DNA of 38,393 nt from Salisapilia sapeloensis CBS 127946 (GCA_023334545.1 JAADVB010000185.1:1-38393), one strand, 5' to 3'; shown: positions 12,100-21,746, counted from the stretch's first letter. Numbers and translations are program-made. Notes: generated by a model not told the origin, from the letters alone.

Positions 12100-13539
12100 A
12101 TGCGCACAAATTGTAGAGGCCCAACCCAAAGTCCCTTCGCGGACCTCCAAATCACTGAAGAGGATGAAATGAAGTTGGACGAGCTTGCCCAGATGCTTGT
12201 GCGTAGCACTTGCCGTCAATATGACCGCCACATTACCGATCGTAAGAGCTATGTCAATCCCGACCGCTGGCGCCGTGTTGCGACTAAGGACGGGCTTACA
12301 ATATACACCGAGCAGAAGAAGAAAAAAGAAAAGAAGCCAAAGTTGAACTTAGCTACATCCACTACTGCGCATCGTTCAGCGTCAAGCAATCGGTCTGGAG
12401 ATACCTCCAATTCCACAGCAGATTTTCCTGTCATACTCGGTTCAGGAACTCTATCGGGAACGCTTGATGATGTAATGTACGGAGTTGTATCTCCGACACC
12501 TGAATTAATGCAGTTGAGAACTTCTTACGTCGGAGAGAACGGCGATGATGGCACAGTGCTTGCAACGCTTTCGGATCCGATCCTCAGTCTACCTTACGAC
12601 AGTCTCGTCATCAAGTGGTTTACCACGAATGGTCCCAACATTATATCCGCAATGCCCATGGCAAAGAAGCAAGACTTTGTCGTGCTCGAAGCGACTGGTA
12701 TGACCGACCTTTTACACGACAATGGTGAAGCGACAAGAGTTGGATATCATATCTGGCACTCTGTTCATTTCCCTCAAACAGTCCACCTCGACTGGGCCCA
12801 CCGTGGTAACATCAGCATCTGCACCATGTACCGTCAGGTTTCCGATGATATGGTAGATGTCTACGTTCGCGGCATTTTCTCGCCTGTGGGAAAGCTGCAG
12901 CGATCTCTTCATATTCGTTCTGCTGCCCAAATGATACTTGGAATCGCAAAATTACCCCATTGTAGCCACATGAAGAAGCTTGCCTACACCATGAGAAGGT
13001 CTGGTGGTAACCTCAAGAGTATGAACATGAGGAAACTTGCCATCGCAAACACTAATGCATCTTCAAATGGAGCTCCCAGACCGAGCAACGGCCCCCCTTG
13101 TGGTTGCTGCCTAAAACTCCCATCTCAAGCGTCTAATCTGCTACCACGAAGTACATGCAAAGCTTGTCTGCAAGTCGTTTGCTCCTCGTGTAAAATCAAG
13201 CACAAAGTGATGTTGCTACCTGCTGTATCGCGCCATTCTTCTTTTGGCTGCTCGGATGACGGTGTGCATGATGCAGAGACTAGTTCGAGCTCAAATCAGT
13301 CGTTTAGTGAAAAACCCAGGGCTATTCAGAAACGGATTACATTCTGCACGAAGTGTGTTGAACGAGCAAGAGGAGCATCGGCAAGTGAAATTGCGACGGA
13401 TGAAATTGCTTGCAAAGACTCTGTAGCTGGATATGCAGAACTCACGTCAGCATTGACATCGATGCTGTCCATCGACCCGCTCGAGGCGGAGGAAGACGCG
13501 GACGATGAAAATAATGAACGTCGATCCTCGACTTTGTGA
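12100..13539 (+). CDS. Oomycete START-like (SRPBCC-fold) domain plus FYVE-like 8-Cys zinc finger protein, 479 aa
   Basis: N-terminal SPF..L.I motif, W...KDGLTIY, GTLDDVMYG, GYHIWHSVHFP, MKKLAY; then CxxC...CxxC...VCxxC...FCxxC. The START assignment is by recalled family pattern. Confidence 0.8.
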   Translation: MRTNCRGPTQSPFADLQITEEDEMKLDELAQMLVRSTCRQYDRHITDRKSYVNPDRWRRVATKDGLTIYTEQKKKKEKKPKLNLATSTTAHRSASSNRSGDTSNSTADFPVILGSGTLSGTLDDVMYGVVSPTPELMQLRTSYVGENGDDGTVLATLSDPILSLPYDSLVIKWFTTNGPNIISAMPMAKKQDFVVLEATGMTDLLHDNGEATRVGYHIWHSVHFPQTVHLDWAHRGNISICTMYRQVSDDMVDVYVRGIFSPVGKLQRSLHIRSAAQMILGIAKLPHCSHMKKLAYTMRRSGGNLKSMNMRKLAIANTNASSNGAPRPSNGPPCGCCLKLPSQASNLLPRSTCKACLQVVCSSCKIKHKVMLLPAVSRHSSFGCSDDGVHDAETSSSSNQSFSEKPRAIQKRITFCTKCVERARGASASEIATDEIACKDSVAGYAELTSALTSMLSIDPLEAEEDADDENNERRSSTL

Positions 13540-14262
13540 TAGCCCAAGACACTGTGAAGAGAAGCAGTGACACTGTACAATAAGCACACTAAAAATAAAA
13601 ATGAAAATGAAGTACTTAAAACTTGTCATTCGTCAACCATTCTGCTATGTCAACGCCCTACTAGATCACATTCAAAAAATATTCCTTTTATGTACTATCA
13701 TTTAGATTGATAATCCAGGAAACATGTAAAATGAACACTCGTGAAGTTGTATGTATCGACAGGGGGCTTTGCACGAGGTAAGAGCTCTTTTCATGATGTT
13801 TATTCTTCTTCCATTCCGAAAAAGCGAAGTGAATATGCTGTGAAGTTACCAAGGTAGCGCTCAACTACTTGGTATAAGGTTGCTGACCATGCGAGTTCTT
13901 GCACAAACTCAATCGAACAATCGGCAGCATGACGCAGAGCTAGCGCCGATATTATCTATATCTGGCAATAAGAGAGTATGAGCTCGTATTCGGTGTACAA
14001 AATACTTTATGAGTTACAGCTAGATCCATGCTAATTTACTTTCGTCGACGCCTCCAGTAGTAGCACAGCCTTCTTATGCTCAGAGCTTTCCTGCTGATTC
14101 AATTCCTCTTCCTAACTAAGGTGCGCACACGCGCACACCTTTAAGTGTTTGCCATATGAAAGTATGTTGAAAACGGAAGACATGATAAAAACTGGCAAAA
14201 TGACTGCATTGATGGAGTACTGAACTGACACAAAATCGCTGGCATGAGGAAGTCTACCTGAC

Positions 14263-15660
14263 CTACAAGATACTCGCGTCCTGATGATTAGTTACTGCAG
14301 GTGTCGAATGATGACCGAACGCTTGAAGAGGTCTCGGATCGTCCTCAGCCTTGGCATCGAGTGCACGACGCCTCGCTTTGACGGCAATCACGACTGCAGC
14401 AGCGATAGCCAAAGCGCCAACCGAGGCAAACACGGCAATCATTATGCCAGTTCCTCCGCTAGAAGTTCCCTTGGACTCTGTGTTCACCGAATTTGACTCG
14501 TCTTCACCCTTGGACTTGGATGCATCAGCAAGTTGAGTTTTATCCGCGTCACTCAAGGATGGAGTGGATGTGGGTGCTGTAGTGTCCTGTACGAATGTGC
14601 TCTCACCAGCAATGCTGGATTCATTTGCGACGTTCACTTTACCAGCGACATCGTCGGACGACTGTGCTTCTTTAGCAGGAGCCTTCGTGCTTTCAGTAGG
14701 AGGAGGCGTTAAAATAGCTCCGTAGGCATTGTTCGACGACGAGCTCGATGTGTCGGGTACAGGAGGTGTTGTTGTTGGATTGGGAGATTTCGGTGGTGGA
14801 CTCGAGGGCTGCATCGTTGGACTTGGGGGTGTCATGGCTGGAGGCGGAGGCGTGGGACTTGAGGGTGTCGTCGCTGGAGGCGGAGGCGGCGAACTTGGCG
14901 ATGGAGACGGCGAGGGGTAGCTTGGTGGTGAAGGTGGAGGATTTGAATAGCTGGACGGTGACGGTTGATTATCTGATGGTGAAGAAGCTCCACCATTGGA
15001 GAATTGATGCGAGCCTTCCGTACATGAACCGGCTTCCAGAGAGACTGTGTCCTCGATCGTTTCTCCGCTGACCGACGTAAGCGAAATCGTGACGCTACTC
15101 AAGTCCGTTTGCGTCTGACTTTGCCCGTCCAATAGAAAGTAGTAAGCACTAGCCAGCATCGTTGTCTCTGCACCGTTGATCTGCATGCTCTTTACGCCTG
15201 CGGCCATGTTGGTCGGCTGAATGGCAGTCCAGAATGCGTTGGAGCCTCCTTTTAGGCAGTACTTGATGTTCCCAGTCACCGGGCAATCGGTGAATTCCCA
15301 CTCGATATCAAGACGAGATGGACCACTTCCAGTCACCTTTGTAAAAACAGTCGGCGACAAGTCCAAGTCTCCGTGGACACATTCAGGACACCGGTCGAGA
15401 ATGTACACCACTTCCGAGTTGTCCGGCGTACTTGGTGACCAGACTTTGGCACATCGTCCACAGGCTTTGGAGCCGTCCCACTGATCATTATTGATAGCGG
15501 CATAGTTATCGTTTGCTGCAGACTCCGCGAACATCATGTTACAGTTGCCCGCCGATGTTTGTCCGAGGGTGTACGTGGTGCCATCGCCTCTGTAGTCTCC
15601 GGCGTGGACAACCGCCGCAGTGGTTGCCAATAGCGCGTATAGCATCTCTGGAGCGTGCAT
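14263..15660 (-). CDS. Expansin-like protein (DPBB + CBM63-like) with Pro/Ser/Thr stalk, TM helix and short cytoplasmic tail, 465 aa
   Basis: Signal peptide to about residue 20; GDGTTY, YAAIN, CGRC, LDRCPECVHGDLDLSP (both conserved Asp); D2 FWTAIQP and SAYYF; hydrophobic helix at about 406-427 followed by KARRR. Confidence 0.9.
   Translation of the reverse strand: MHAPEMLYALLATTAAVVHAGDYRGDGTTYTLGQTSAGNCNMMFAESAANDNYAAINNDQWDGSKACGRCAKVWSPSTPDNSEVVYILDRCPECVHGDLDLSPTVFTKVTGSGPSRLDIEWEFTDCPVTGNIKYCLKGGSNAFWTAIQPTNMAAGVKSMQINGAETTMLASAYYFLLDGQSQTQTDLSSVTISLTSVSGETIEDTVSLEAGSCTEGSHQFSNGGASSPSDNQPSPSSYSNPPPSPPSYPSPSPSPSSPPPPPATTPSSPTPPPPAMTPPSPTMQPSSPPPKSPNPTTTPPVPDTSSSSSNNAYGAILTPPPTESTKAPAKEAQSSDDVAGKVNVANESSIAGESTFVQDTTAPTSTPSLSDADKTQLADASKSKGEDESNSVNTESKGTSSGGTGIMIAVFASVGALAIAAAVVIAVKARRRALDAKAEDDPRPLQAFGHHSTPAVTNHQDASIL
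14815..14886. repeat. Two 36-bp tandem units in the expansin stalk (PPPPATTPSSPT / PPPPAMTPPSPT)
   Basis: 14815-14850 versus 14851-14886 match at 32 of 36 positions. Confidence 0.9.
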
Positions 15661-15974
15661 CTCGACTTTCAGTGCTTCGACCTTCTAAATCAAGGGCGGA
15701 AAGCAGACTGGTCCATTCAGCGAGGTAAGAGCATAAAGCCACTTTCGATTGACGACTGGTCATGCCCTTGACTTGACCTGAGTATCGATTTCTAGAAACC
15801 ATAAGTTTTTCACAATCGAACGCTCGGCATCAGGCAGAGAAAGTACAGAAGTAGGAACGATAGCAAATTTGGGCCCAAAGTTGAAAAGACGAGCAAGATG
15901 GATAGAAGAATAGGACGCTCAAAAGGGCAAGATACATGACGTTTCAACCCAACAATGGATGGTATATTCTGAAG

Positions 15975-16721
15975 TTAAATTTCGGCAATGTCCTGACGAA
16001 CGTTCACTGGCGACGCAAACGTATCAAAGGACCTCTGGAGCGAGGGATCGTGCTTGCTCTTTTTACTCGCTTTACTCTTGCTGCCGGTTTTTTTAATGAT
16101 GAGCACAACCATGAGGACGACTGCGACTGCTCCACCGACTGACGCAGTGACGGCGATCCAGCCTACCCCACCCTTATCTTTGTCCGAGTCTGAACTAGGT
16201 GCCATTTTGATTTTCGCAATGTCAGCGTCATCGGCATTGGCAGCAAAGACCTTGGCAGTAGCATCTTCGAGAGTGGCTTTCTGTGCACTTACAGATGGGT
16301 CCTCTTCATCTTCAGGTTCCAACAGGTCATCGCTGTCGGCCGATCCGGCAACAAAGTCGTGACAGCTGCCAAAGACATACTCGACTTCAGCGTCATCGCC
16401 AAACTCATCGACGAGAGATTGCCCCAGATGAATGTCTCCGTCATCACAATCGGTGCATTGACCCATGACCATGGCAACGAATGCATGTTCCTTATCGTCG
16501 TCGCCCTTGGGTCGAATCGCCATGCATTCCTTACAGGCATCTCCATTGTCATATAGACTCTCGCTGACGGCAGCATAGTATCGATTGTGAAAGCTATCAT
16601 AGTTTATGCCCTTACATAAGGAGTCCTCATCTGTCTTTGCAGCGATTTTGCCGCTTTGAACACCGTGAGCTGAAGCGACCAGCGCTGCGCATGCTAATAT
16701 AGTGTAGAATGTACGCTGCAT
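15975..16721 (-). CDS. Single-domain DPBB (RlpA/loosenin/expansin-D1-like) protein with acidic stalk, TM helix and tail, 248 aa
   Basis: Signal peptide, YYAAVS...G.AC.EC, QC.DC..GDIHL pattern collinear with expansin D1; no D2; TM helix at about 188-209 then KK. Confidence 0.8.
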   Translation of the reverse strand: MQRTFYTILACAALVASAHGVQSGKIAAKTDEDSLCKGINYDSFHNRYYAAVSESLYDNGDACKECMAIRPKGDDDKEHAFVAMVMGQCTDCDDGDIHLGQSLVDEFGDDAEVEYVFGSCHDFVAGSADSDDLLEPEDEEDPSVSAQKATLEDATAKVFAANADDADIAKIKMAPSSDSDKDKGGVGWIAVTASVGGAVAVVLMVVLIIKKTGSKSKASKKSKHDPSLQRSFDTFASPVNVRQDIAEI

Positions 16722-16744
16722 GCTGTCTGCGGTGCGTATCTGGT

Positions 16745-16760
16745 GAATCGAGAAATGGCG
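16745..16760 (-). promoter_or_regulatory. INR-like element
   Basis: Minus strand CGCCATTTCTCGATTC (YCAYTYY = CCATTTC), about 25 nt upstream of the ATG at 16721. Confidence 0.4.
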
Positions 16761-17158
16761 AGATCGAATACGGCACTACAAAAATCAAGTCGCTCTAGTA
16801 GCGATGAAGGCATGACGTGTCATCGGTGGTCTTGTGGGAGCCAAAGAGTGCAAGCTGAGTCATATGAGGCCAGCTGGCGATATCACCGGGACTTCCTCTT
16901 CGCTATACTAGGACTCATATAAAAGGCTCTTGTTTTGGCCGATAGACGGAGTCAAAGTCCCCTAGGGTACAACATTGAATCATGTAAAAGTGAAACTACT
17001 GGCAGAAACGTAGGAAATACCTATCGTAGATATTTTCGTATAAAAGAAGTACACGTAAAAATGTCTTTTCAGAGCCAAATGGCTTCATGGGAAATATTGT
17101 TTGATGCATAAATTGGACAAGTTAGTTTTACATCCGGTTGGAGCCTGCCAACTCACCT

Positions 17159-19474
17159 ATGGCTCGGACGGAACGGCTTCAACTCGCTCAAGAGACTCTC
17201 GCTCGTCTCAGTATACTCCAACACAGCCCTGCTCTATCCTATGAAGTGTACGATGCCCTGTATTCGTACTACCGACTGCCTCTTTCGACTTTAGAGCGAA
17301 TAGAATACCTGACGCCAACCTTTTCGAAGCTTGATACGGATGACAGCCATACAATAAATCTTATATGGGAAGAGTATCTGCAGCTTATAAACGCCTATAA
17401 CAACCTCATCACGCCTACGGAAGCAGCCACGTTGATTGCTATTCGAGCAGAGCAATGCTTCGACGGGATGGTTTGTCATGATGATCTATCGTTCTTTACG
17501 ACGACTACAAATAAAATTAAGCACGGTAAAAAACTCGAATCCTTACTAGGTTTACTTTACGTTAATGCAGGGGACTACTATCTTGCTTTCGAAGTGCTCA
17601 TTACCATCCTCGAAAGCACCTTATACGACTTGTATTACGACAATAACGACCAAGCGAAGAAAAATATTATTCTACGAGATCTATTGCTCTCTACTACACT
17701 GGAACAGCGACTTCCACCAGGCCTATTATCACTCCTTCGCACTCTTTTCCTGCCTTCCGGACTCAACTTGCGAAATCTCGTTTGGCATGGCTTTCTACAT
17801 CCATCCGAGCTACCTCGGTGCTATGGCTGTCTCTCTGCTCTGCTACTTGTGATCCTGTCAAATTACTTGCCTCGAGCTACGAGACCGACAGATTCTGCAG
17901 AATTATTCCACATGCATACATACGATCACCGCTTTCATCTCTCCTCCGCCTTAGCTGCACAACTCGATAAGGTTCCATCAGAGATTTTCATCGAACAAGT
18001 TCTCCACAGTCCTTATATTCCCATCGGTCGACACCATCTAGTCGCACGTGCCTTTAACGCAGTGGTCATTGCCGGTGATGAAACGCTGGCACTGTTCCTA
18101 TTGTTACCAGTGCTCGAGCACTCTCTACGTCTCCACTTTATAGAGGCCAACAAACGGCTTGTACCTTCATGCCAGTCGTACGCCAAGGCCCATGTCCACC
18201 AGTACTTTTCGACTTTAGATGGCTTTGGGCAGAGGACGAAGCATCAAGTGATGCTGCATCCGCAGCTGGCAGACACTATAGAAGGCAAAGTTATTGCGAA
18301 TGCCTTGTACGACCAATTGCCAGTGGCAGTCCTGTCAGTACTTTTGGATATGTTTATGATGGCAGATGGACCGAATGTAAGGGCAAAGTTGTGTCATGGA
18401 GAAGCATCATTAGATGGCTTGTTTAAGAACAAGTCCTGGAGAGAGACGTCAGTGTCGACTAAACTACTCATTTATGCTTACTGCCACCTCTGTGATTCAG
18501 CCACTGGCCTAAGCGACGAGTTCTCGAAACGACCTGTCTTCAACAAAGAGTACGTGAGCTCTTTCCATCCGTTCCTAGAGCTTCAAAGGAAACTGCTAAA
18601 TCATCGAGATATGGCCGTGAAGTTCAATATACTCCGCCAAAAGTTTAAATGCGTCGAACTAGAGGAACTGGACGATGACACCATGACGACTCGAGTGACC
18701 TTTTATAACCAAACTGCAGCACCACAAAAATATGCTGCAATGACTCTACCATCCTCCAAGGTTGATGAATGGAAACTAGTGATGCATAAGCTCGATATGA
18801 TGGAGGACGACGGCCGGATGGTTAAATCGAGTGCCTTTAGTAACCTCGTATATGCACTAGACAGCACATTAAATCGCATTGTGGACAAAATGGAGGAGGA
18901 GTACATGAGTCACCATGCGACTTGCTCAAGCACTAGCTCATTTCTTTCTCTTCTACGGCATAGGAGTTTGAAGCAGGAATCAAATATACTTATTCGAGGA
19001 CGGCTGTCAGATCAAGTTGAGAAAGCCCTGTTGGCGCTTTCTGACAGCGATGGACTTGGTGTTGCACCCTGCATGTTCGAGACGTTGGAAAGTCTGCACC
19101 GATGTTTGCATTTCTTCACGTTGAAAGCAGAGGAGCTAGCTGCGATGGTAGATGACAAAAGTGCTCGAACGAATCATCGAAAGTCGCTCTTCACTCTTAT
19201 ATGCGTGTTCCCGGTTGTTGAAAAGATCTTGTTTGTGTGTCTAGCAGCAATTGAGCATCATGTCGTTCACTTACTCGAGACTGGATTGCGCAATGACATC
19301 AGGTGTCCACATACTAAGGCGTACGAACAGCTACAAAAGAAGCTGCTGCAGTTCGTCACTGCTTTCGAAGGATGTAGTGGCAGCCCAACAGTAGCTTCCA
19401 AAAGCTTGGAAAAGGGAATTCGACTTGCAAGTGAGTTCTCTACTTCAAAACCTATGAAAGCAGTTACAGGATAG
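17159..19474 (+). CDS. ERMARD: ERMARD/C6orf70-like (DUF4209) protein with two HEPN-type R-x4-H motifs, 771 aa from the first ATG
   Basis: PSGLNLRNLVWHGF and DGPNVRAKLCHGE match my recollection of the two conserved ERMARD blocks; also LLPVLEH.LR and YFSTLD. The ORF-track start at 17138 is TTG; the first ATG is 17159. Confidence 0.78.
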   Translation: MARTERLQLAQETLARLSILQHSPALSYEVYDALYSYYRLPLSTLERIEYLTPTFSKLDTDDSHTINLIWEEYLQLINAYNNLITPTEAATLIAIRAEQCFDGMVCHDDLSFFTTTTNKIKHGKKLESLLGLLYVNAGDYYLAFEVLITILESTLYDLYYDNNDQAKKNIILRDLLLSTTLEQRLPPGLLSLLRTLFLPSGLNLRNLVWHGFLHPSELPRCYGCLSALLLVILSNYLPRATRPTDSAELFHMHTYDHRFHLSSALAAQLDKVPSEIFIEQVLHSPYIPIGRHHLVARAFNAVVIAGDETLALFLLLPVLEHSLRLHFIEANKRLVPSCQSYAKAHVHQYFSTLDGFGQRTKHQVMLHPQLADTIEGKVIANALYDQLPVAVLSVLLDMFMMADGPNVRAKLCHGEASLDGLFKNKSWRETSVSTKLLIYAYCHLCDSATGLSDEFSKRPVFNKEYVSSFHPFLELQRKLLNHRDMAVKFNILRQKFKCVELEELDDDTMTTRVTFYNQTAAPQKYAAMTLPSSKVDEWKLVMHKLDMMEDDGRMVKSSAFSNLVYALDSTLNRIVDKMEEEYMSHHATCSSTSSFLSLLRHRSLKQESNILIRGRLSDQVEKALLALSDSDGLGVAPCMFETLESLHRCLHFFTLKAEELAAMVDDKSARTNHRKSLFTLICVFPVVEKILFVCLAAIEHHVVHLLETGLRNDIRCPHTKAYEQLQKKLLQFVTAFEGCSGSPTVASKSLEKGIRLASEFSTSKPMKAVTG

Positions 19475-19613
19475 ACTAGATATACCAACAAGATCGAATT
19501 GAATCAACAATTTCATTTTGTTTTATCAACGGTACGTACACTATCTTCACTTTCAGCTTATAGACAATAAAGCTAGTGATCATTCTGTTCACTGCAGAAG
19601 ATCGCTTTGCCTC

Positions 19614-21746
19614 TTAGACTTTCGACGATGGAACAGGCGAGAGCACCCGGTCATAGTTCGAAGCCGCAGGCGATTGAACTGGACCATTATAAACACGAGG
19701 AGATTCGCCATCAGCCACAAGATCGGTGCCAATGAAAGTTTCCTTCGCATATCTCCGCTGGAGTGCTTGCTTCTTTTTTGCGAGGACGACGATGACAGCA
19801 GCGGCGACCAGCGCAACTCCTGCGAGCACGACTGCCACAATGACCGTTGTGCTAGCTGGGGAGCTCTCGTCACTATCCTTGGTTGAGACTTCATTCGCCT
19901 CTGGAGGGGATGAGTCACTACTGTCCGATGGTTCCGGCACTTGCACTGGTGGCATCATATCATGGCGAGTCCGCAATTGCTGCTTTGTGGAACTCGAGGC
20001 CGATGCAGAGGCAGAGGATGCAGACATATCTACAGAGGCAGAAGAATAGCTTGATGAGTCAACTGGATTGAGAGACGAGCTGGCAGCACTTGAGAAGGAT
20101 TCCGTTGGAGCTGGAAGTACTGGTTCCGACACCAGGACCGGTTCCGAATTTGGTGAGTCCTCGATCGAGTAGGATGCCGAGCTGCTGAAAACAGAGCTCG
20201 CTTCCATCGTCGATTGAACCTCTACATCGTTTGAGCTGTCCGATACAGGTGGGGTAGTCGGTTCCACTACCGGATCTGAAAGTGGCAAACTCTCCATCGA
20301 ACCAGATAACGAGCTGACTGAGGCAGAGTTCGACCCCATGGATGAATGGGCTTCAAGATTATTCGAACTGTCCAATGTTGGTGACGTAGTAGGCTCCACT
20401 ACTTCCTCCGGGCTGGATAAGTCATCCATCGAATACGATTCCCAAGTGCCAGAAGCCGAGCTGGAGTATGAAGACGATTGGAGCTTACCTTCTTGTGAAT
20501 CTTCGGATGCTTCAGTACCCATCGAATCGGTCTCATCGCTAGACTTTGAATCTGTTCCAGAAGCAGAATAAGTTGCTGGGCTGGTTGGGGTAGGGACGGG
20601 AGACGGACTTGGGCTCGGTTCCGGAGGACTGGTTGTCTCTGGTTCAGGGGTCTCCGGAGGACTTGTTGTGAGCGCAGAAGTTTCTGGTGCGTCCGTTGTT
20701 TGCTCGGCGATATCATTTTGACCATTGTCACCAGAACTCGCATCCGTTTCCCGATTAAACGAATAAGACTTTTGTGACTTACCATCCTCTGGCGATTCCG
20801 GTGCGGGCGATTTTGTCTCATGACTCGTAAATGAGGACTCATCCTTTTCCGGTGACGGGGTTGGACTCGGTTCTGGTGGACTCGTCGTTGAAGGAGCAGG
20901 AGTTTCCGCAGGCTGAGGCTCAGGAGCCTCTGTTTCTTGCTCCAATTCAGCGGTTGGTGACGTAGGCGTAGCTTCTGAAGTATTGTCGCTATAGTCGTCA
21001 TCACCTTCATAGTCGAGATCCGCTCTGGTCATAGCAGAGCCCCTGGCAAACTGACGACTGCCTTTAACGCAGCTTTCCTTTTCGAACGAGACTGTATCTT
21101 CAATCTTCTCACCGTTGACGCCCTCCAGCTTAATCTTAACATTGCTCAGATCGGTCTTCTCTTGACTCAGACCATCTTTTAGAAAGTAGTACGCTGATGG
21201 CACCATGGATCCGCTTTCTCCGTTGATTTCCATGTTCTTCACACCAGCAATGAAGTTCGTGGGCTGAATCGCCGTCCAGAACTCGTTCGAGCCGCCTTTA
21301 AGGCAGTACTCGATGTTAGAGTCTTCTTCAGGGCAGTCAACGAATGTCCACTCGATGGTCAATCGGCTCGGGCCGGAGCCGGTTACTTTTTCGAAGACAT
21401 CTGGAGACAAGTCCAGGTCTCCATGGGCGCAGCCAGGGCATTGGTCGACAATGTAGACCGTTTCGCTTTTGGAGCTGGAGCATCGATCGTCAATGCACTT
21501 GACTCTGGCACACCGCCCGCAGTTCATGGTGGACTTGAACTGAGGTGTGTTTAAAGCAGCGTACTTCTTCTTGGCTGCGGCCGGGTAGCTCATAAAATTG
21601 CAGTTTCCGTTGCTGGGATCATCCAGGCCGTAGGTTGTTCCGTCTCCGACAAAAGCATCTCCAGCGCTGTTGAGCTTGGCCTCCGATGCAAGGAAGGAGG
21701 CAAAGAGGAGTGCAGTCGTGAAAGTGAAGTGCAAACACTTGATCAT
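19614..21746 (-). CDS. Expansin-like protein (DPBB + CBM63-like) with about 400-aa Ser/Pro/Glu/Thr stalk, TM helix and tail, 710 aa
   Basis: Signal peptide; GDGTTY, YAALN, CGRC, VDQCPGCAHGDLDLSP, FWTAIQP, SAYYF; TM helix at about 634-656 then KKK. Confidence 0.9.
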   Translation of the reverse strand: MIKCLHFTFTTALLFASFLASEAKLNSAGDAFVGDGTTYGLDDPSNGNCNFMSYPAAAKKKYAALNTPQFKSTMNCGRCARVKCIDDRCSSSKSETVYIVDQCPGCAHGDLDLSPDVFEKVTGSGPSRLTIEWTFVDCPEEDSNIEYCLKGGSNEFWTAIQPTNFIAGVKNMEINGESGSMVPSAYYFLKDGLSQEKTDLSNVKIKLEGVNGEKIEDTVSFEKESCVKGSRQFARGSAMTRADLDYEGDDDYSDNTSEATPTSPTAELEQETEAPEPQPAETPAPSTTSPPEPSPTPSPEKDESSFTSHETKSPAPESPEDGKSQKSYSFNRETDASSGDNGQNDIAEQTTDAPETSALTTSPPETPEPETTSPPEPSPSPSPVPTPTSPATYSASGTDSKSSDETDSMGTEASEDSQEGKLQSSSYSSSASGTWESYSMDDLSSPEEVVEPTTSPTLDSSNNLEAHSSMGSNSASVSSLSGSMESLPLSDPVVEPTTPPVSDSSNDVEVQSTMEASSVFSSSASYSIEDSPNSEPVLVSEPVLPAPTESFSSAASSSLNPVDSSSYSSASVDMSASSASASASSSTKQQLRTRHDMMPPVQVPEPSDSSDSSPPEANEVSTKDSDESSPASTTVIVAVVLAGVALVAAAVIVVLAKKKQALQRRYAKETFIGTDLVADGESPRVYNGPVQSPAASNYDRVLSPVPSSKV
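20142..20405. repeat. Degenerate 132-nt (44-aa) tandem repeat in the stalk
   Basis: EVVEPTTSPTLDSSN (20405), PVVEPTTPPVSDSSN (20273) and PVLVSEP (20141) start exactly 132 nt apart on the minus strand. Confidence 0.75.

What the first reader, a model, noticed from the sequence alone, without database searches (positions are those of the whole stretch)
14263..21746. Cluster of three membrane-tethered expansin/DPBB proteins with graded stalk lengths: candidate cell-wall remodelling or sensing array
Seen: three same-strand genes, each signal peptide + expansin-type head + low-complexity stalk + one TM helix + basic stop-transfer + 38-54 aa tail. Stalks are about 65, 185 and 400 aa. Known: typical plant, bacterial and fungal expansins are soluble secreted proteins; oomycete walls contain cellulose/beta-glucan; yeast Wsc1/Mid2 sensors use the same head-stalk-TM-tail layout. 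Inference: these act on the organism's own wall at different depths, or report wall strain to the cytoplasm, rather than loosening host walls. I do not know of a functional description of tethered oomycete expansins as sensors, but that needs a literature check.
Basis: partly seen in the sequence, partly recalled or inferred. Interest (0 to 1): 0.7.

Follow-up and report, generated by a model that had tools for sequence, protein, structure and literature searches.

The report
Membrane-anchored oomycete expansin gene cluster
Three neighbouring genes of an oomycete encode cellulose-wall "loosening" (expansin-like) heads held on the cell membrane by a flexible stalk, one membrane helix and a short, unexpectedly well conserved inner tail; this anchored form is widespread in oomycetes and had been noted before, but what the anchor and tail do is still unknown.

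Summary
Three intronless minus-strand genes (g1 14263-15660, g2 15975-16721, g3 19614-21746) each encode a signal peptide, a DPBB/expansin-like head, a low-complexity stalk (184, 63 and 400 aa), one TM helix, a basic stop-transfer and a 38-54 aa tail. A plus-strand DUF4209 gene lies between g2 and g3.

The g1 and g3 heads are two-domain microbial expansins that keep the key Asp and aromatic residues. g2 has D1 only and has lost both Asp.

The layout is not special to this window. About three quarters of 101 oomycete homologues share it, and Blackman 2014 already noted C-terminal TMDs on Phytophthora parasitica CBM63 proteins. The genome has at least two more tethered paralogues, with stalks of about 340 and 459 aa.

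Stalk length is labile: tandem-repeat indels, internal duplications, and 86-271 aa within orthologue groups. I therefore read "graded stalks" as drift, not design.

The TM-proximal module is conserved: a juxtamembrane NTKS..GTSP motif and a tail motif, aromatic-x3-6-[ST]P-x4-16-hydrophobic-COOH (76 of 83 tails). This rules out a GPI signal.

Most likely these are type I anchored expansins working on the organism's own wall. A sensor role is possible but untested.

The parts
14263..15660 (-). g1: 465-aa tethered two-domain expansin-like protein (stop codon included)
   Evidence: ORF. Contigs of runs X2/X4 are colinear over 14200-15687. Homologues up to 67% identical in Phytophthora, Pythium and Globisporangium.
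15001..15600 (-). g1 head, aa 21-220: expansin D1 (DPBB) plus D2 (CBM63-like)
   Evidence: phmmer against PDB expansins E 4e-18. AF2 pLDDT about 90. Foldseek hits 2bh0/3d30, 9ms5, 7wvr and 4jcw, TM 0.78-0.85. D89 and D100 align to BsEXLX1 D71 and D82; F143/W144 and Y173 align to W125/W126 and Y157.
14449..15000 (-). g1 stalk, aa 221-404: 57% Ser+Thr+Pro, no Cys
   Evidence: Composition. AF2 pLDDT <50.
14815..14888 (-). 36-nt tandem repeat (2.1 copies) inside the g1 stalk; copy number differs in a related organism
   Evidence: TRF. A contig of run X6 skips 14818-14855 (36 nt) and carries +3 nt at 14733.
14380..14448 (-). g1 TM helix, aa 405-427
   Evidence: Hydropathy maximum 2.64. AF2 helix 405-438.
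14266..14379 (-). g1 cytoplasmic tail, aa 428-465 (KARRR...QAFGHHSTP...ASIL)
   Evidence: Matches the tail profile, E 2.4e-11 in the own genome. Motif aromatic-x-[ST]P-x-hydrophobic-COOH.
15975..16721 (-). g2: 248-aa tethered D1-only pseudo-expansin
   Evidence: ORF. A contig of X2 covers 15903-16964. Pieces about 93-95% identical in run X6.
16356..16661 (-). g2 head, aa 21-122: diverged DPBB domain. Cys pattern kept; D71-equivalent is Gly and D82-equivalent is His; the GDGTxYT motif is lost.
   Evidence: hhalign prob 94.6%. Alignment A3. AF2 pLDDT 75, with fold hits to expansin D1, kiwellin and loosenin.
16167..16355 (-). g2 stalk, aa 123-185: acidic and Ala-rich (27% Asp+Glu, only 19% Ser+Thr+Pro)
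   Evidence: Composition.
16095..16166 (-). g2 TM helix, aa 186-209
   Evidence: Hydropathy maximum 2.68.
15978..16094 (-). g2 cytoplasmic tail, aa 210-248 (...RSFDTFASPVNVRQDIAEI)
   Evidence: Best match to the tail profile in the own genome, E 5.7e-15. Same motif as Phytophthora, Peronospora and Hyaloperonospora D1-only and B-type proteins.
19614..21746 (-). g3: 710-aa tethered two-domain expansin-like protein
   Evidence: ORF. 53% identical to g1 over the head. Contigs of X2/X4 lie on its 3' part from 19510/19572. Falls in a supported clade with Pythium insidiosum, Globisporangium and Phytophthora proteins.
21048..21677 (-). g3 head, aa 24-233: D1 plus D2
   Evidence: Pfam DPBB_1 30.9 bits and Barwin 24.8 bits. 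Alignment A1 invariant residues.
19848..21047 (-). g3 stalk, aa 234-633: 48% Ser+Thr+Pro, net charge -59, with internal duplications (269-337 ~ 348-432; 437-479 ~ 481-523)
19779..19847 (-). g3 TM helix, aa 634-656
   Evidence: Hydropathy maximum 3.19.
19617..19778 (-). g3 cytoplasmic tail, aa 657-710 (KKKQ...NYDRVLSPVPSSKV)
   Evidence: Only the TM-proximal part matches the A/B tail profile.

Best explanation
g1, g2 and g3 are members of a conserved oomycete family of type I membrane-anchored expansin-like proteins.

Shown:
- Each has an N-terminal hydrophobic leader, an extracellular DPBB/expansin head, a disordered Ser/Thr/Pro- or acid-rich stalk, one TM helix, a basic stop-transfer and a short cytoplasmic tail.
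- g1 and g3 keep the residues that BsEXLX1 needs for wall loosening and cellulose binding. g2 is a D1-only derivative that has lost both conserved aspartates.
- The juxtamembrane segment, the TM helix and the tail form a conserved module.

Inferred:
- The proteins enter the ER, the stalk is probably O-glycosylated, and they reach the plasma membrane with the head held in the inner layers of the organism's own cellulose/beta-glucan wall.
- There g1 and g3 loosen or reorganise nascent glucan non-hydrolytically, close to the site of synthesis (growth, branching, cyst or appressorium wall remodelling).
- g2 binds without loosening, or modulates the others.
- The conserved tail (aromatic, then a proline-directed Ser/Thr, then a hydrophobic C-terminus) most likely controls traffic, turnover or regulation of the anchored protein.
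- The stalk is a spacer whose exact length is not selected.
For: - Architecture.
- Expansin identity of the heads: (D89/D100 = BsEXLX1 D71/D82; F143/W144/Y173 = W125/W126/Y157).
- g2 as a degenerate D1.
- Conserved D1-only tethered relatives in Phytophthora capsici, P. citrophthora, P. oleae, Peronosclerospora, Hyaloperonospora and Peronospora.
- Family-wide layout: 78 of 101 homologues have a stalk, a TM helix and a tail (about 26-65 aa's printed rows), in every major clade of the head tree.
- Selection on the anchor module: tail 65-76% and TM about 65% identity against stalk 34-39%. Tail motif in 76 of 83 unique tails against 0.3 expected after shuffling. Juxtamembrane NTKS..GTSP motif.
- Own-wall argument: the tethered members are retained in animal-pathogenic and mycoparasitic species and in obligate biotrophs. 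Literature proposes that membrane anchorage of oomycete wall enzymes points to own-wall modification (PMC4176579), and that oomycete expansins may serve morphogenesis (bioRxiv 10.1101/637728).
- Transcription: gene-bounded contigs in two older runs.
Against: - No localisation, glycosylation, binding or activity data exist for any tethered member.
- The one functionally studied oomycete expansin-like protein, PcEXLX1, behaves as an apoplastic elicitor seen by the plant. Host-facing roles are therefore real for part of the family, and the heads could be shed.
- Purified heads of two oomycete expansins bind xylan and hardwood pulp (PMC11040781). That fits plant substrates as well as the organism's own cellulose.
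- The runs that show transcription are only guessed to be RNA.
- Signal peptides were not scored with a dedicated predictor.
- The tail could be a signalling element rather than a sorting element.
Confidence: 0.55

Rival explanations
1. Wall-integrity or mechano-sensors, analogous to yeast Wsc1/Mid2. The head grips wall glucan, the glycosylated stalk acts as a spring, and strain is passed through the TM helix to the conserved tail. The tail recruits a cytoplasmic partner and may be switched by phosphorylation of its [ST]P site.
For: - The order head-stalk-TM-tail is the same as in Wsc1/Mid2 (layout; sensors reviewed in PMC6685044, listed).
- The tail and juxtamembrane segment are under purifying selection across genera, with a nearly invariant [ST]P.
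- g2 and the short-stalk Phytophthora paralogues have lost loosening residues but keep the anchor and tail. This suggests that the anchor module, not loosening, is the indispensable part.
Against: - There is no homology to WSC or Mid2 (no PF01822).
- The tails are only 38-54 aa, with no recognisable domain.
- The tail profile finds no other receptor-like proteins.
- Stalk length and sequence drift freely, and the g2 stalk is not Ser/Thr-rich.
- No partner or pathway is known. No paper was found proposing it.
Confidence: 0.15
2. Host- or substrate-directed surface proteins. The anchored expansin is displayed on hyphae, cysts or haustoria to stick to and loosen plant cellulose at the contact site, or it is a membrane pro-form whose head is released by juxtamembrane cleavage into the apoplast.
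For: - PcEXLX1 is perceived in the plant apoplast and affects virulence.
- Oomycete expansin heads bind xylan and hardwood pulp.
- CBM63 genes of Pythium periplocum are induced during mycoparasitism of a cellulose-walled host.
- The conserved juxtamembrane motif could be a sheddase site.
- TMD proteins can be released from membranes (PMC4176579).
Against: - The family and its anchor are retained in Pythium insidiosum and Lagenidium giganteum, whose hosts have no cellulose, and in biotrophs with reduced wall-degrading sets.
- A pure pro-form would not need a conserved cytoplasmic tail.
- Soluble paralogues without a TM helix exist alongside the tethered ones for secreted roles.
Confidence: 0.2
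3. The C-terminal helix is a GPI-attachment signal, and the mature proteins are lipid-anchored or wall-linked.
For: Only the presence of a C-terminal hydrophobic segment after a Ser/Gly-rich stretch.
Against: The hydrophobic segment is followed by K/R and then 38-54 hydrophilic residues that carry a conserved motif. GPI signals end with the hydrophobic stretch.
Confidence: 0.02

Closest known systems
Bacterial and other microbial expansins (EXLX1 of Bacillus subtilis, PDB 2bh0/3d30; Clavibacter 4jcw; Streptomyces 9ms5; Talaromyces 7wvr)
   Same: The g1 and g3 heads have the same two-domain fold (D1 DPBB plus D2 CBM63-like), with TM 0.78-0.85. They keep D71, D82, W125/W126 and Y157 equivalents.
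   Different: Those proteins are soluble and about 200 aa long. Here the head is followed by a 184-400 aa stalk, a TM helix and a cytoplasmic tail. The oomycete heads also carry extra disulphide-forming Cys (CGRC, CPEC).
Phytophthora parasitica CBM63 expansin-like proteins with a C-terminal TMD (Blackman et al. 2014, PMC4176579)
   Same: Same family and same architecture. Six of 12 members were reported with a single C-terminal TMD. Homologues from P. nicotianae/parasitica are among the hits.
   Different: That paper only lists the TMD. The conserved tail and juxtamembrane motifs, the D1-only tethered subfamily and the lability of the stalk were not described there, as far as the passages I read show.
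PcEXLX1 of Phytophthora capsici (Pi et al. 2022, seen only through citing papers)
   Same: An oomycete expansin-like protein of the same superfamily. A P. capsici relative named EXLX5 (P0005, 450 aa) has the stalk-TM-tail layout.
   Different: PcEXLX1 is described as an apoplastic elicitor perceived through NbERK1/SOBIR1/BAK1. Whether PcEXLX1 itself is tethered could not be checked.
Yeast wall-integrity sensors Wsc1 and Mid2
   Same: Same order of parts: signal peptide, wall-facing head, long low-complexity stalk, one TM helix, short cytoplasmic tail.
   Different: No sequence or fold relation. The head here is an expansin, not a WSC domain. The tail is shorter and has no known partner. This is a functional analogy only.
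Fungal loosenins and plant kiwellins/barwins (single DPBB proteins), for g2
   Same: The g2 head is a lone DPBB domain, and its model matches loosenin PcaLOOL12 (9ce9), kiwellin and expansin D1.
   Different: g2 is membrane-anchored and lacks both conserved aspartates. It derives from the oomycete two-domain family, with which it shares the tail and tandem linkage.
Dictyostelium expansin-like proteins (ExpL family, Darley et al. 2003)
   Same: Expansin-like proteins of a non-plant organism with a cellulose wall, thought to act on its own cellulose. From memory, several are annotated as single-pass membrane proteins.
   Different: The membrane anchoring of the Dictyostelium proteins could not be verified here because the paper is not held. 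They are only distantly related in sequence.

Membership tests
Microbial expansin (EXLX: D1 DPBB + D2 CBM63) | Two tightly packed domains with the expansin fold | tested here: met
   g1: Foldseek against 2bh0, 9ms5, 7wvr and 4jcw, E 1e-15 to 1e-17, TM 0.78-0.85 by target; phmmer E 4e-18. g3: 53% identical to g1 over both domains. g2: NOT met, only D1.
Microbial expansin (EXLX: D1 DPBB + D2 CBM63) | Conserved D1 groove residues (BsEXLX1 D71 and D82; D82 needed for loosening according to Georgelis et al. 2011) | tested here: met
   g1 D89 and D100 align to D71 and D82. D89 is invariant and D100 at least 90% conserved in the family alignment, which includes g3. g2 has Gly and His at these columns, so the feature is not met for g2.
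Microbial expansin (EXLX: D1 DPBB + D2 CBM63) | Linear aromatic platform on D2 (W125, W126, Y157) | tested here: met
   g1 F143/W144 and Y173 align to these residues. W144 and Y174 are invariant in 28 family members. g2 has no D2.
Microbial expansin (EXLX: D1 DPBB + D2 CBM63) | Non-hydrolytic wall-loosening and cellulose-binding activity | not testable with these tools
   Needs creep and binding assays. Related oomycete heads (NspEXLX1, PcaEXLX1) bind xylan and pulp (PMC11040781).
Oomycete C-terminally anchored CBM63/expansin-like proteins | Signal peptide, head, then a single TM helix near the C-terminus followed by a cytoplasmic tail | tested here: met
   for the window. 78 of 101 homologues have the same layout. 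Literature precedent.
Oomycete C-terminally anchored CBM63/expansin-like proteins | Conserved anchor module: juxtamembrane [AV][NTS]T[KRQ][ST]..GT[SD]P and tail aromatic-x3-6-[ST]P-x4-16-hydrophobic-COOH (defined here) | tested here: met
   Tail motif present in g1, g2 and g3. Juxtamembrane motif recognisable in g1 (VNTES..GGTG) and g3 (VSTKD) but absent from g2.
Wsc1/Mid2-type wall-integrity sensors | WSC cysteine-rich head (PF01822), or the Mid2 N-glycosylated head | tested here: not met
   The Pfam scan gives only DPBB_1/Barwin.
Wsc1/Mid2-type wall-integrity sensors | Ser/Thr-rich stalk, single TM helix, cytoplasmic tail | tested here: met
   g1 57% and g3 48% Ser+Thr+Pro. The g2 stalk is acidic and Ala-rich with only 19%.
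Wsc1/Mid2-type wall-integrity sensors | Tail binds a Rho-GEF and activates a wall-integrity MAPK pathway | not testable with these tools
   No candidate partner is known, so no complex prediction was attempted.
GPI-anchored surface proteins | Hydrophobic signal at the extreme C-terminus with no hydrophilic tail after it | tested here: not met
   38-54 hydrophilic, conserved residues follow the helix.
Loosenin-like single-DPBB proteins (g2 only) | Lone DPBB domain that retains the polysaccharide-groove aspartate | tested here: not met
   DPBB fold supported, but both aspartates are replaced.

The most novel reading that the evidence does not exclude
The conserved juxtamembrane-TM-tail module makes tethered expansins the oomycete counterpart of fungal Wsc/Mid2 or animal integrin-type wall-membrane links. 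The head grips cellulose. The tail, switched by phosphorylation of its nearly invariant [ST]P and read through its hydrophobic C-terminus, reports wall strain or couples the wall to cytoplasmic machinery. Catalytically dead members such as g2 would act as pure sensors or decoys.
Probability: 0.15. Interest if true: 0.8.

Novelty: new member of a known kind. Interest (0 to 1): 0.4.

Why it matters
Oomycetes build cellulose walls and include major crop and animal pathogens, yet how they loosen, pattern or monitor their own wall is largely unknown. Whether their many expansin genes serve morphogenesis or host attack is also an open question (bioRxiv 10.1101/637728).

Most oomycete expansins turn out to be membrane-anchored through a module that is itself conserved: a juxtamembrane motif, a TM helix and a tail with a proline-directed Ser/Thr and a hydrophobic C-terminus. 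This gives concrete, mutable handles for testing that question. It also singles out expansin-dead anchored paralogues as natural separation-of-function variants.

For this window alone the finding is an ordinary new instance of a family whose anchoring was already noted.

Tried and rejected
- Word-index protein search with g2 gave no hit. Its relatives appeared only with the TM+tail profile in the exhaustive search.
- In the own genome, the tail profile matched beyond g1, g2 and g3 only at TM-plus-Lys level (positions 1-37, E 0.007 or worse). In the 1.84-billion library it returned only expansin-family proteins or short fragments, plus one 12-residue match in a 4429-aa protein. I found no evidence that the tail is a module shared with other surface proteins. 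Short motifs are beyond this method.
- The GPI hypothesis is rejected (see rival explanations).
- 'Graded stalks' as a design is rejected on paralogue, orthologue and repeat-indel evidence. Length differences of 50-70 aa between database proteins with identical heads were not used as evidence. At least one (P0013) comes from a predicted intron inside an uninterrupted ORF.
- The promoters of the three genes share no 8-10-mers.
- The window ORF 12100-13539 showed no BLASTP match (E<=1e-3) to the FYVE-domain gene that flanks the P. capsici cluster.
- The Atlas structure search with the anchor module returned only generic single-helix matches, so it was uninformative.
- Self-BLAST of whole proteins gave nothing until the stalks were split.
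- Literature: Darley 2003 and Pi 2022 are not held. There was no hit for PITG_07523. No paper linking oomycete expansins to wall sensing was found.
- The organism could not be named. Run names are coded and its own proteins are not in the protein database; the best identity is 67%, similar to Phytophthora, Pythium and Globisporangium.
- No complex prediction was run because no binding partner is proposed.

Full report
**What is there**

The stretch 14263-21746 holds three uninterrupted minus-strand ORFs:
- g1, 14263-15660, 465 aa
- g2, 15975-16721, 248 aa
- g3, 19614-21746, 710 aa

A plus-strand gene with a DUF4209/ERMARD-N domain lies between g2 and g3.

Each protein starts with a short hydrophobic leader. 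Each has exactly one strong hydrophobic segment near the C-terminus, followed at once by Lys/Arg and then a hydrophilic tail:

| Protein | TM helix (aa) | Tail (aa) | Stalk (aa) |
|---|---|---|---|
| g1 | 405-427 | 38 | 184 |
| g2 | 186-209 | 39 | 63 |
| g3 | 634-656 | 54 | 400 |

The stalks lie between head and helix and contain no Cys. Those of g1 and g3 are 57% and 48% Ser+Thr+Pro. That of g2 is acidic and Ala-rich.

The AF2 model of g1, built with 27 homologues, shows a confident head (res 21-222, pLDDT about 90), a disordered stalk and one long helix at 405-438. The caveats are that the cluster is interrupted by an unrelated gene and that the g2 head is not a full expansin head.

**The heads**

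g1 and g3 are 53% identical over 272 residues (E 7e-83). g1 matches solved microbial expansins by sequence: 9ms5 at E 4e-18, 7wvr, 2bh0 and 9ms4. It also matches them by fold, with TM 0.78-0.85 normalised by the target.

In the alignment to B. subtilis EXLX1 (2bh0), g1 D89 and D100 fall on D71 and D82. F143/W144 and Y173 fall on the D2 aromatic platform W125/W126/Y157. D89, W144 and Y174 are invariant, and D100 is at least 90% conserved, in a 28-member family alignment that includes g3. g1 and g3 therefore have what a working expansin needs, as far as sequence can show.

g2 has no Pfam hit and no word-index relatives. A profile comparison with the family heads gives 94.6% probability (E 7e-8) over residues 1-103. 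Its Cys pattern (C36, C63/C66, C89/C92, C120) is that of D1, and the model built on that alignment is a DPBB barrel similar to expansin D1, kiwellin and loosenin. g2 lacks D2. It has Gly and His at the two aspartate columns and has lost the GDGTxYT strand.

**The layout is a family trait, not a peculiarity of this locus**

A search with the g1 head found 101 oomycete proteins at E 1e-35 or better. They come from Phytophthora, Nothophytophthora, Plasmopara, Peronospora, Hyaloperonospora, Peronosclerospora, Pythium, Globisporangium and Lagenidium. The best is only 67% identical, so the source organism itself is not in the database.

Of these, 78 have a stalk, one TM helix and a tail (about 26-65 aa's printed rows). 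On a quick maximum-likelihood tree of the heads, anchored members occur in every major clade and TM-less ones are nested among them (quick search, midpoint root, so only suggestive).

The literature already records the anchoring. Blackman et al. 2014 noted a single C-terminal TMD on 6 of 12 P. parasitica CBM63 expansin-like proteins. For other anchored wall enzymes, the same authors argued that anchorage suggests action on the pathogen's own wall (PMC4176579). Chase et al. state that it is unclear whether oomycete expansins serve morphogenesis, plant interaction or both (bioRxiv 10.1101/637728).

**Graded stalks**

The same 22.4 Mb assembly holds at least two more tethered paralogues. C566 is 734 aa with a stalk of about 459 aa. 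C126 is partial, with a stalk of about 340 aa. Soluble paralogues also exist: C586 (249 aa) and C88 (stalk but no TM). The stalk series is thus 63, 184, about 340, 400 and about 459 aa, spread over several loci.

Several results show that stalk length is labile:
- Within three orthologue groups the stalks range 151-271, 86-196 and 99-231 aa. Mean pairwise identity is only 18-39%, against 60-83% for the heads.
- The g1 stalk contains a 36-nt tandem repeat. A related organism (run X6, roughly 92-95% identical) lacks one unit (14818-14855) and has 3 extra bases at 14733.
- The g3 stalk contains two diverged internal duplications.

Stalk length therefore looks like a freely drifting spacer property. 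I reject the idea of a designed depth series.

**The conserved anchor module**

This is the part that seems not to have been described. Tails align across subfamilies and genera. They have an invariant Pro and nearly invariant Ser-Phe before it:
- ...SVQSFDVQNTPSDRRQAFGIL in one group
- ...RSFDTFSSPVRINETIAKI in another

Mean pairwise identity is 65-76% in the tail and about 65% in the TM helix of the two large groups, against 34-39% in the stalk.

A relaxed motif, aromatic-x3-6-[ST]P-x4-16-hydrophobic-COOH, is present in 76 of 83 distinct tails, against 0.3 expected after shuffling. It is present in g1, g2 and g3. The sequences are related, so this measures conservation, not independent origin.

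Just outside the membrane, most members carry [AV][NTS]T[KRQ][ST]-x5-8-GT[SD]P. g1 and g3 have recognisable versions; g2 does not.

These facts exclude a cleaved GPI signal. They also show that the cytoplasmic end is functional.

An exhaustive profile search with TM+tail returned 31 proteins. All of those long enough to judge are expansin-like. In the own genome only g2 (E 6e-15) and g1 (E 2e-11) match over the whole profile. The module therefore belongs to this family.

**g2 has relatives**

The same search uncovered D1-only, anchored proteins of 242-255 aa in P. capsici, P. citrophthora, P. oleae, Peronosclerospora sorghi, Hyaloperonospora and Peronospora matthiolae. Their tail is RSFDTFSSP...IVKI.

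In P. capsici the D1-only gene sits between a 310-aa short-stalk anchored two-domain paralogue, whose D82 equivalent is Gly, and a 407-aa anchored two-domain gene. A three-gene anchored cluster thus exists there too.

In Globisporangium polare two anchored expansin genes lie next to a DUF4209/ERMARD-N gene, as in this window. The locus is therefore an old tandem array. It has repeatedly produced anchored members that have lost loosening residues but kept the anchor.

**Expression**

One run holds the stretch completely and may be the source of the assembly. Four older runs of the same organism hold 88-92% of its words.

The contigs of two of these runs end at gene borders:
- g1: 14200-15687
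- g2: 15903-16964
- DUF4209 gene: 17125-19499, with a GT..AG joint that skips 56 bases
- g3: from 19510/19572 onward

The intergenic DNA has gaps. That pattern, together with the spliced joint, is what transcript assemblies give. The library type is only guessed, and depth cannot be used to rank genes. The contigs over g1 and g2 show no joints, so these genes are unspliced. The 5' two thirds of g3 were outside the 6000 letters laid.

**Mechanism**

Shown: anchored type I topology by sequence logic; expansin heads that look competent in g1 and g3 and incompetent in g2; a disordered spacer; and a conserved juxtamembrane-TM-tail module.

Inferred: the proteins sit in the plasma membrane with heads in the inner wall, and they act on nascent cellulose/beta-glucan of the organism itself. 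The main arguments for this are:
- the anchoring itself;
- retention of anchored members in Pythium insidiosum (mammals), Lagenidium giganteum (mosquitoes) and Pythium oligandrum (mycoparasite);
- retention in obligate biotrophs;
- the coexistence of soluble paralogues for secreted roles.

I give this reading about 0.55.

The tail most likely carries sorting or regulatory information. From general knowledge, a hydrophobic C-terminus and acidic patches are typical ER-export or sorting features, and [ST]P is a proline-directed kinase site. This step is inference only.

The sensor reading (0.15) rests on the architectural analogy with Wsc1/Mid2 and on the survival of the anchor in loosening-dead members. 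It lacks any partner or pathway.

The host-directed or shed-effector reading (0.2) rests on PcEXLX1 biology and on xylan and pulp binding by oomycete heads.

**Verdict**

These are new members of a known, already noted kind. The conserved anchor module and the D1-only anchored subfamily are the points worth follow-up.

Noticed in passing
window 17125-19499 (+): DUF4209/ERMARD-N gene between g2 and g3. Contigs of run X2 show a GT..AG joint skipping 56 bases (17247 to 17304), so the mechanical TTG start at 17138 is probably not the true start. Its 3' end lies within about 10-70 bases of the 3' end of g3 (convergent). A homologous gene lies next to two tethered expansin genes in Globisporangium polare (L023 15343-17991).
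   Followed up: partly
L012 7-1083 (G000 C88); L022 13989-15149, 15855-16913, 17461-18231: TM-less paralogues with a stalk end in a shared Cys-plus-basic C-terminus: ACRKIKKHMRRHL here, and KCRVRSSRHRN, KCGVRSRRN and KCYVRRSRH in P. oleae. This may be a second, unexplained C-terminal module of the family.
   Followed up: no
L024 8551-9483 (P. capsici); L026 8649-9590 (Peronosclerospora sorghi): Short-stalk (about 30-40 aa) anchored two-domain paralogues with Gly at the D82-equivalent position (GLGLSP). They lie directly upstream of the D1-only anchored gene. In P. capsici this forms a three-gene anchored cluster.
   Followed up: partly
L022 10001-11599 (P. oleae, P0013): The database protein is 464 aa, but the locus is one uninterrupted 532-codon ORF. 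The annotated intron inside the repetitive stalk is probably an artefact. Several pairs of database proteins with identical heads differ by 50-70 aa in the same way (P0002/P0003, P0005/P0008, P0026/P0028).
   Followed up: partly
P0102 (Lagenidium giganteum, 820 aa); P0001 (P. kernoviae, 615 aa): These look like gene models that fuse two adjacent expansin genes. P0102 contains two complete head-stalk-TM-tail units in series.
   Followed up: no
window 12100-13539 (+): 479-aa ORF convergent with g1, with a Cys-rich C-terminal region (CGCC...CKAC...CSSCKIKHK). It has no Pfam hit at E<=1 and no BLASTP match (E<=1e-3) to the FYVE-domain gene that flanks the P. capsici cluster.
   Followed up: partly
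G000 as a whole: The assembly is only 22.4 Mb in 1365 contigs, and the best protein identities (about 67%) are similar to Phytophthora, Pythium and Globisporangium. It is either an incomplete assembly or a small-genome oomycete lineage that is absent from the protein database.
   Followed up: no
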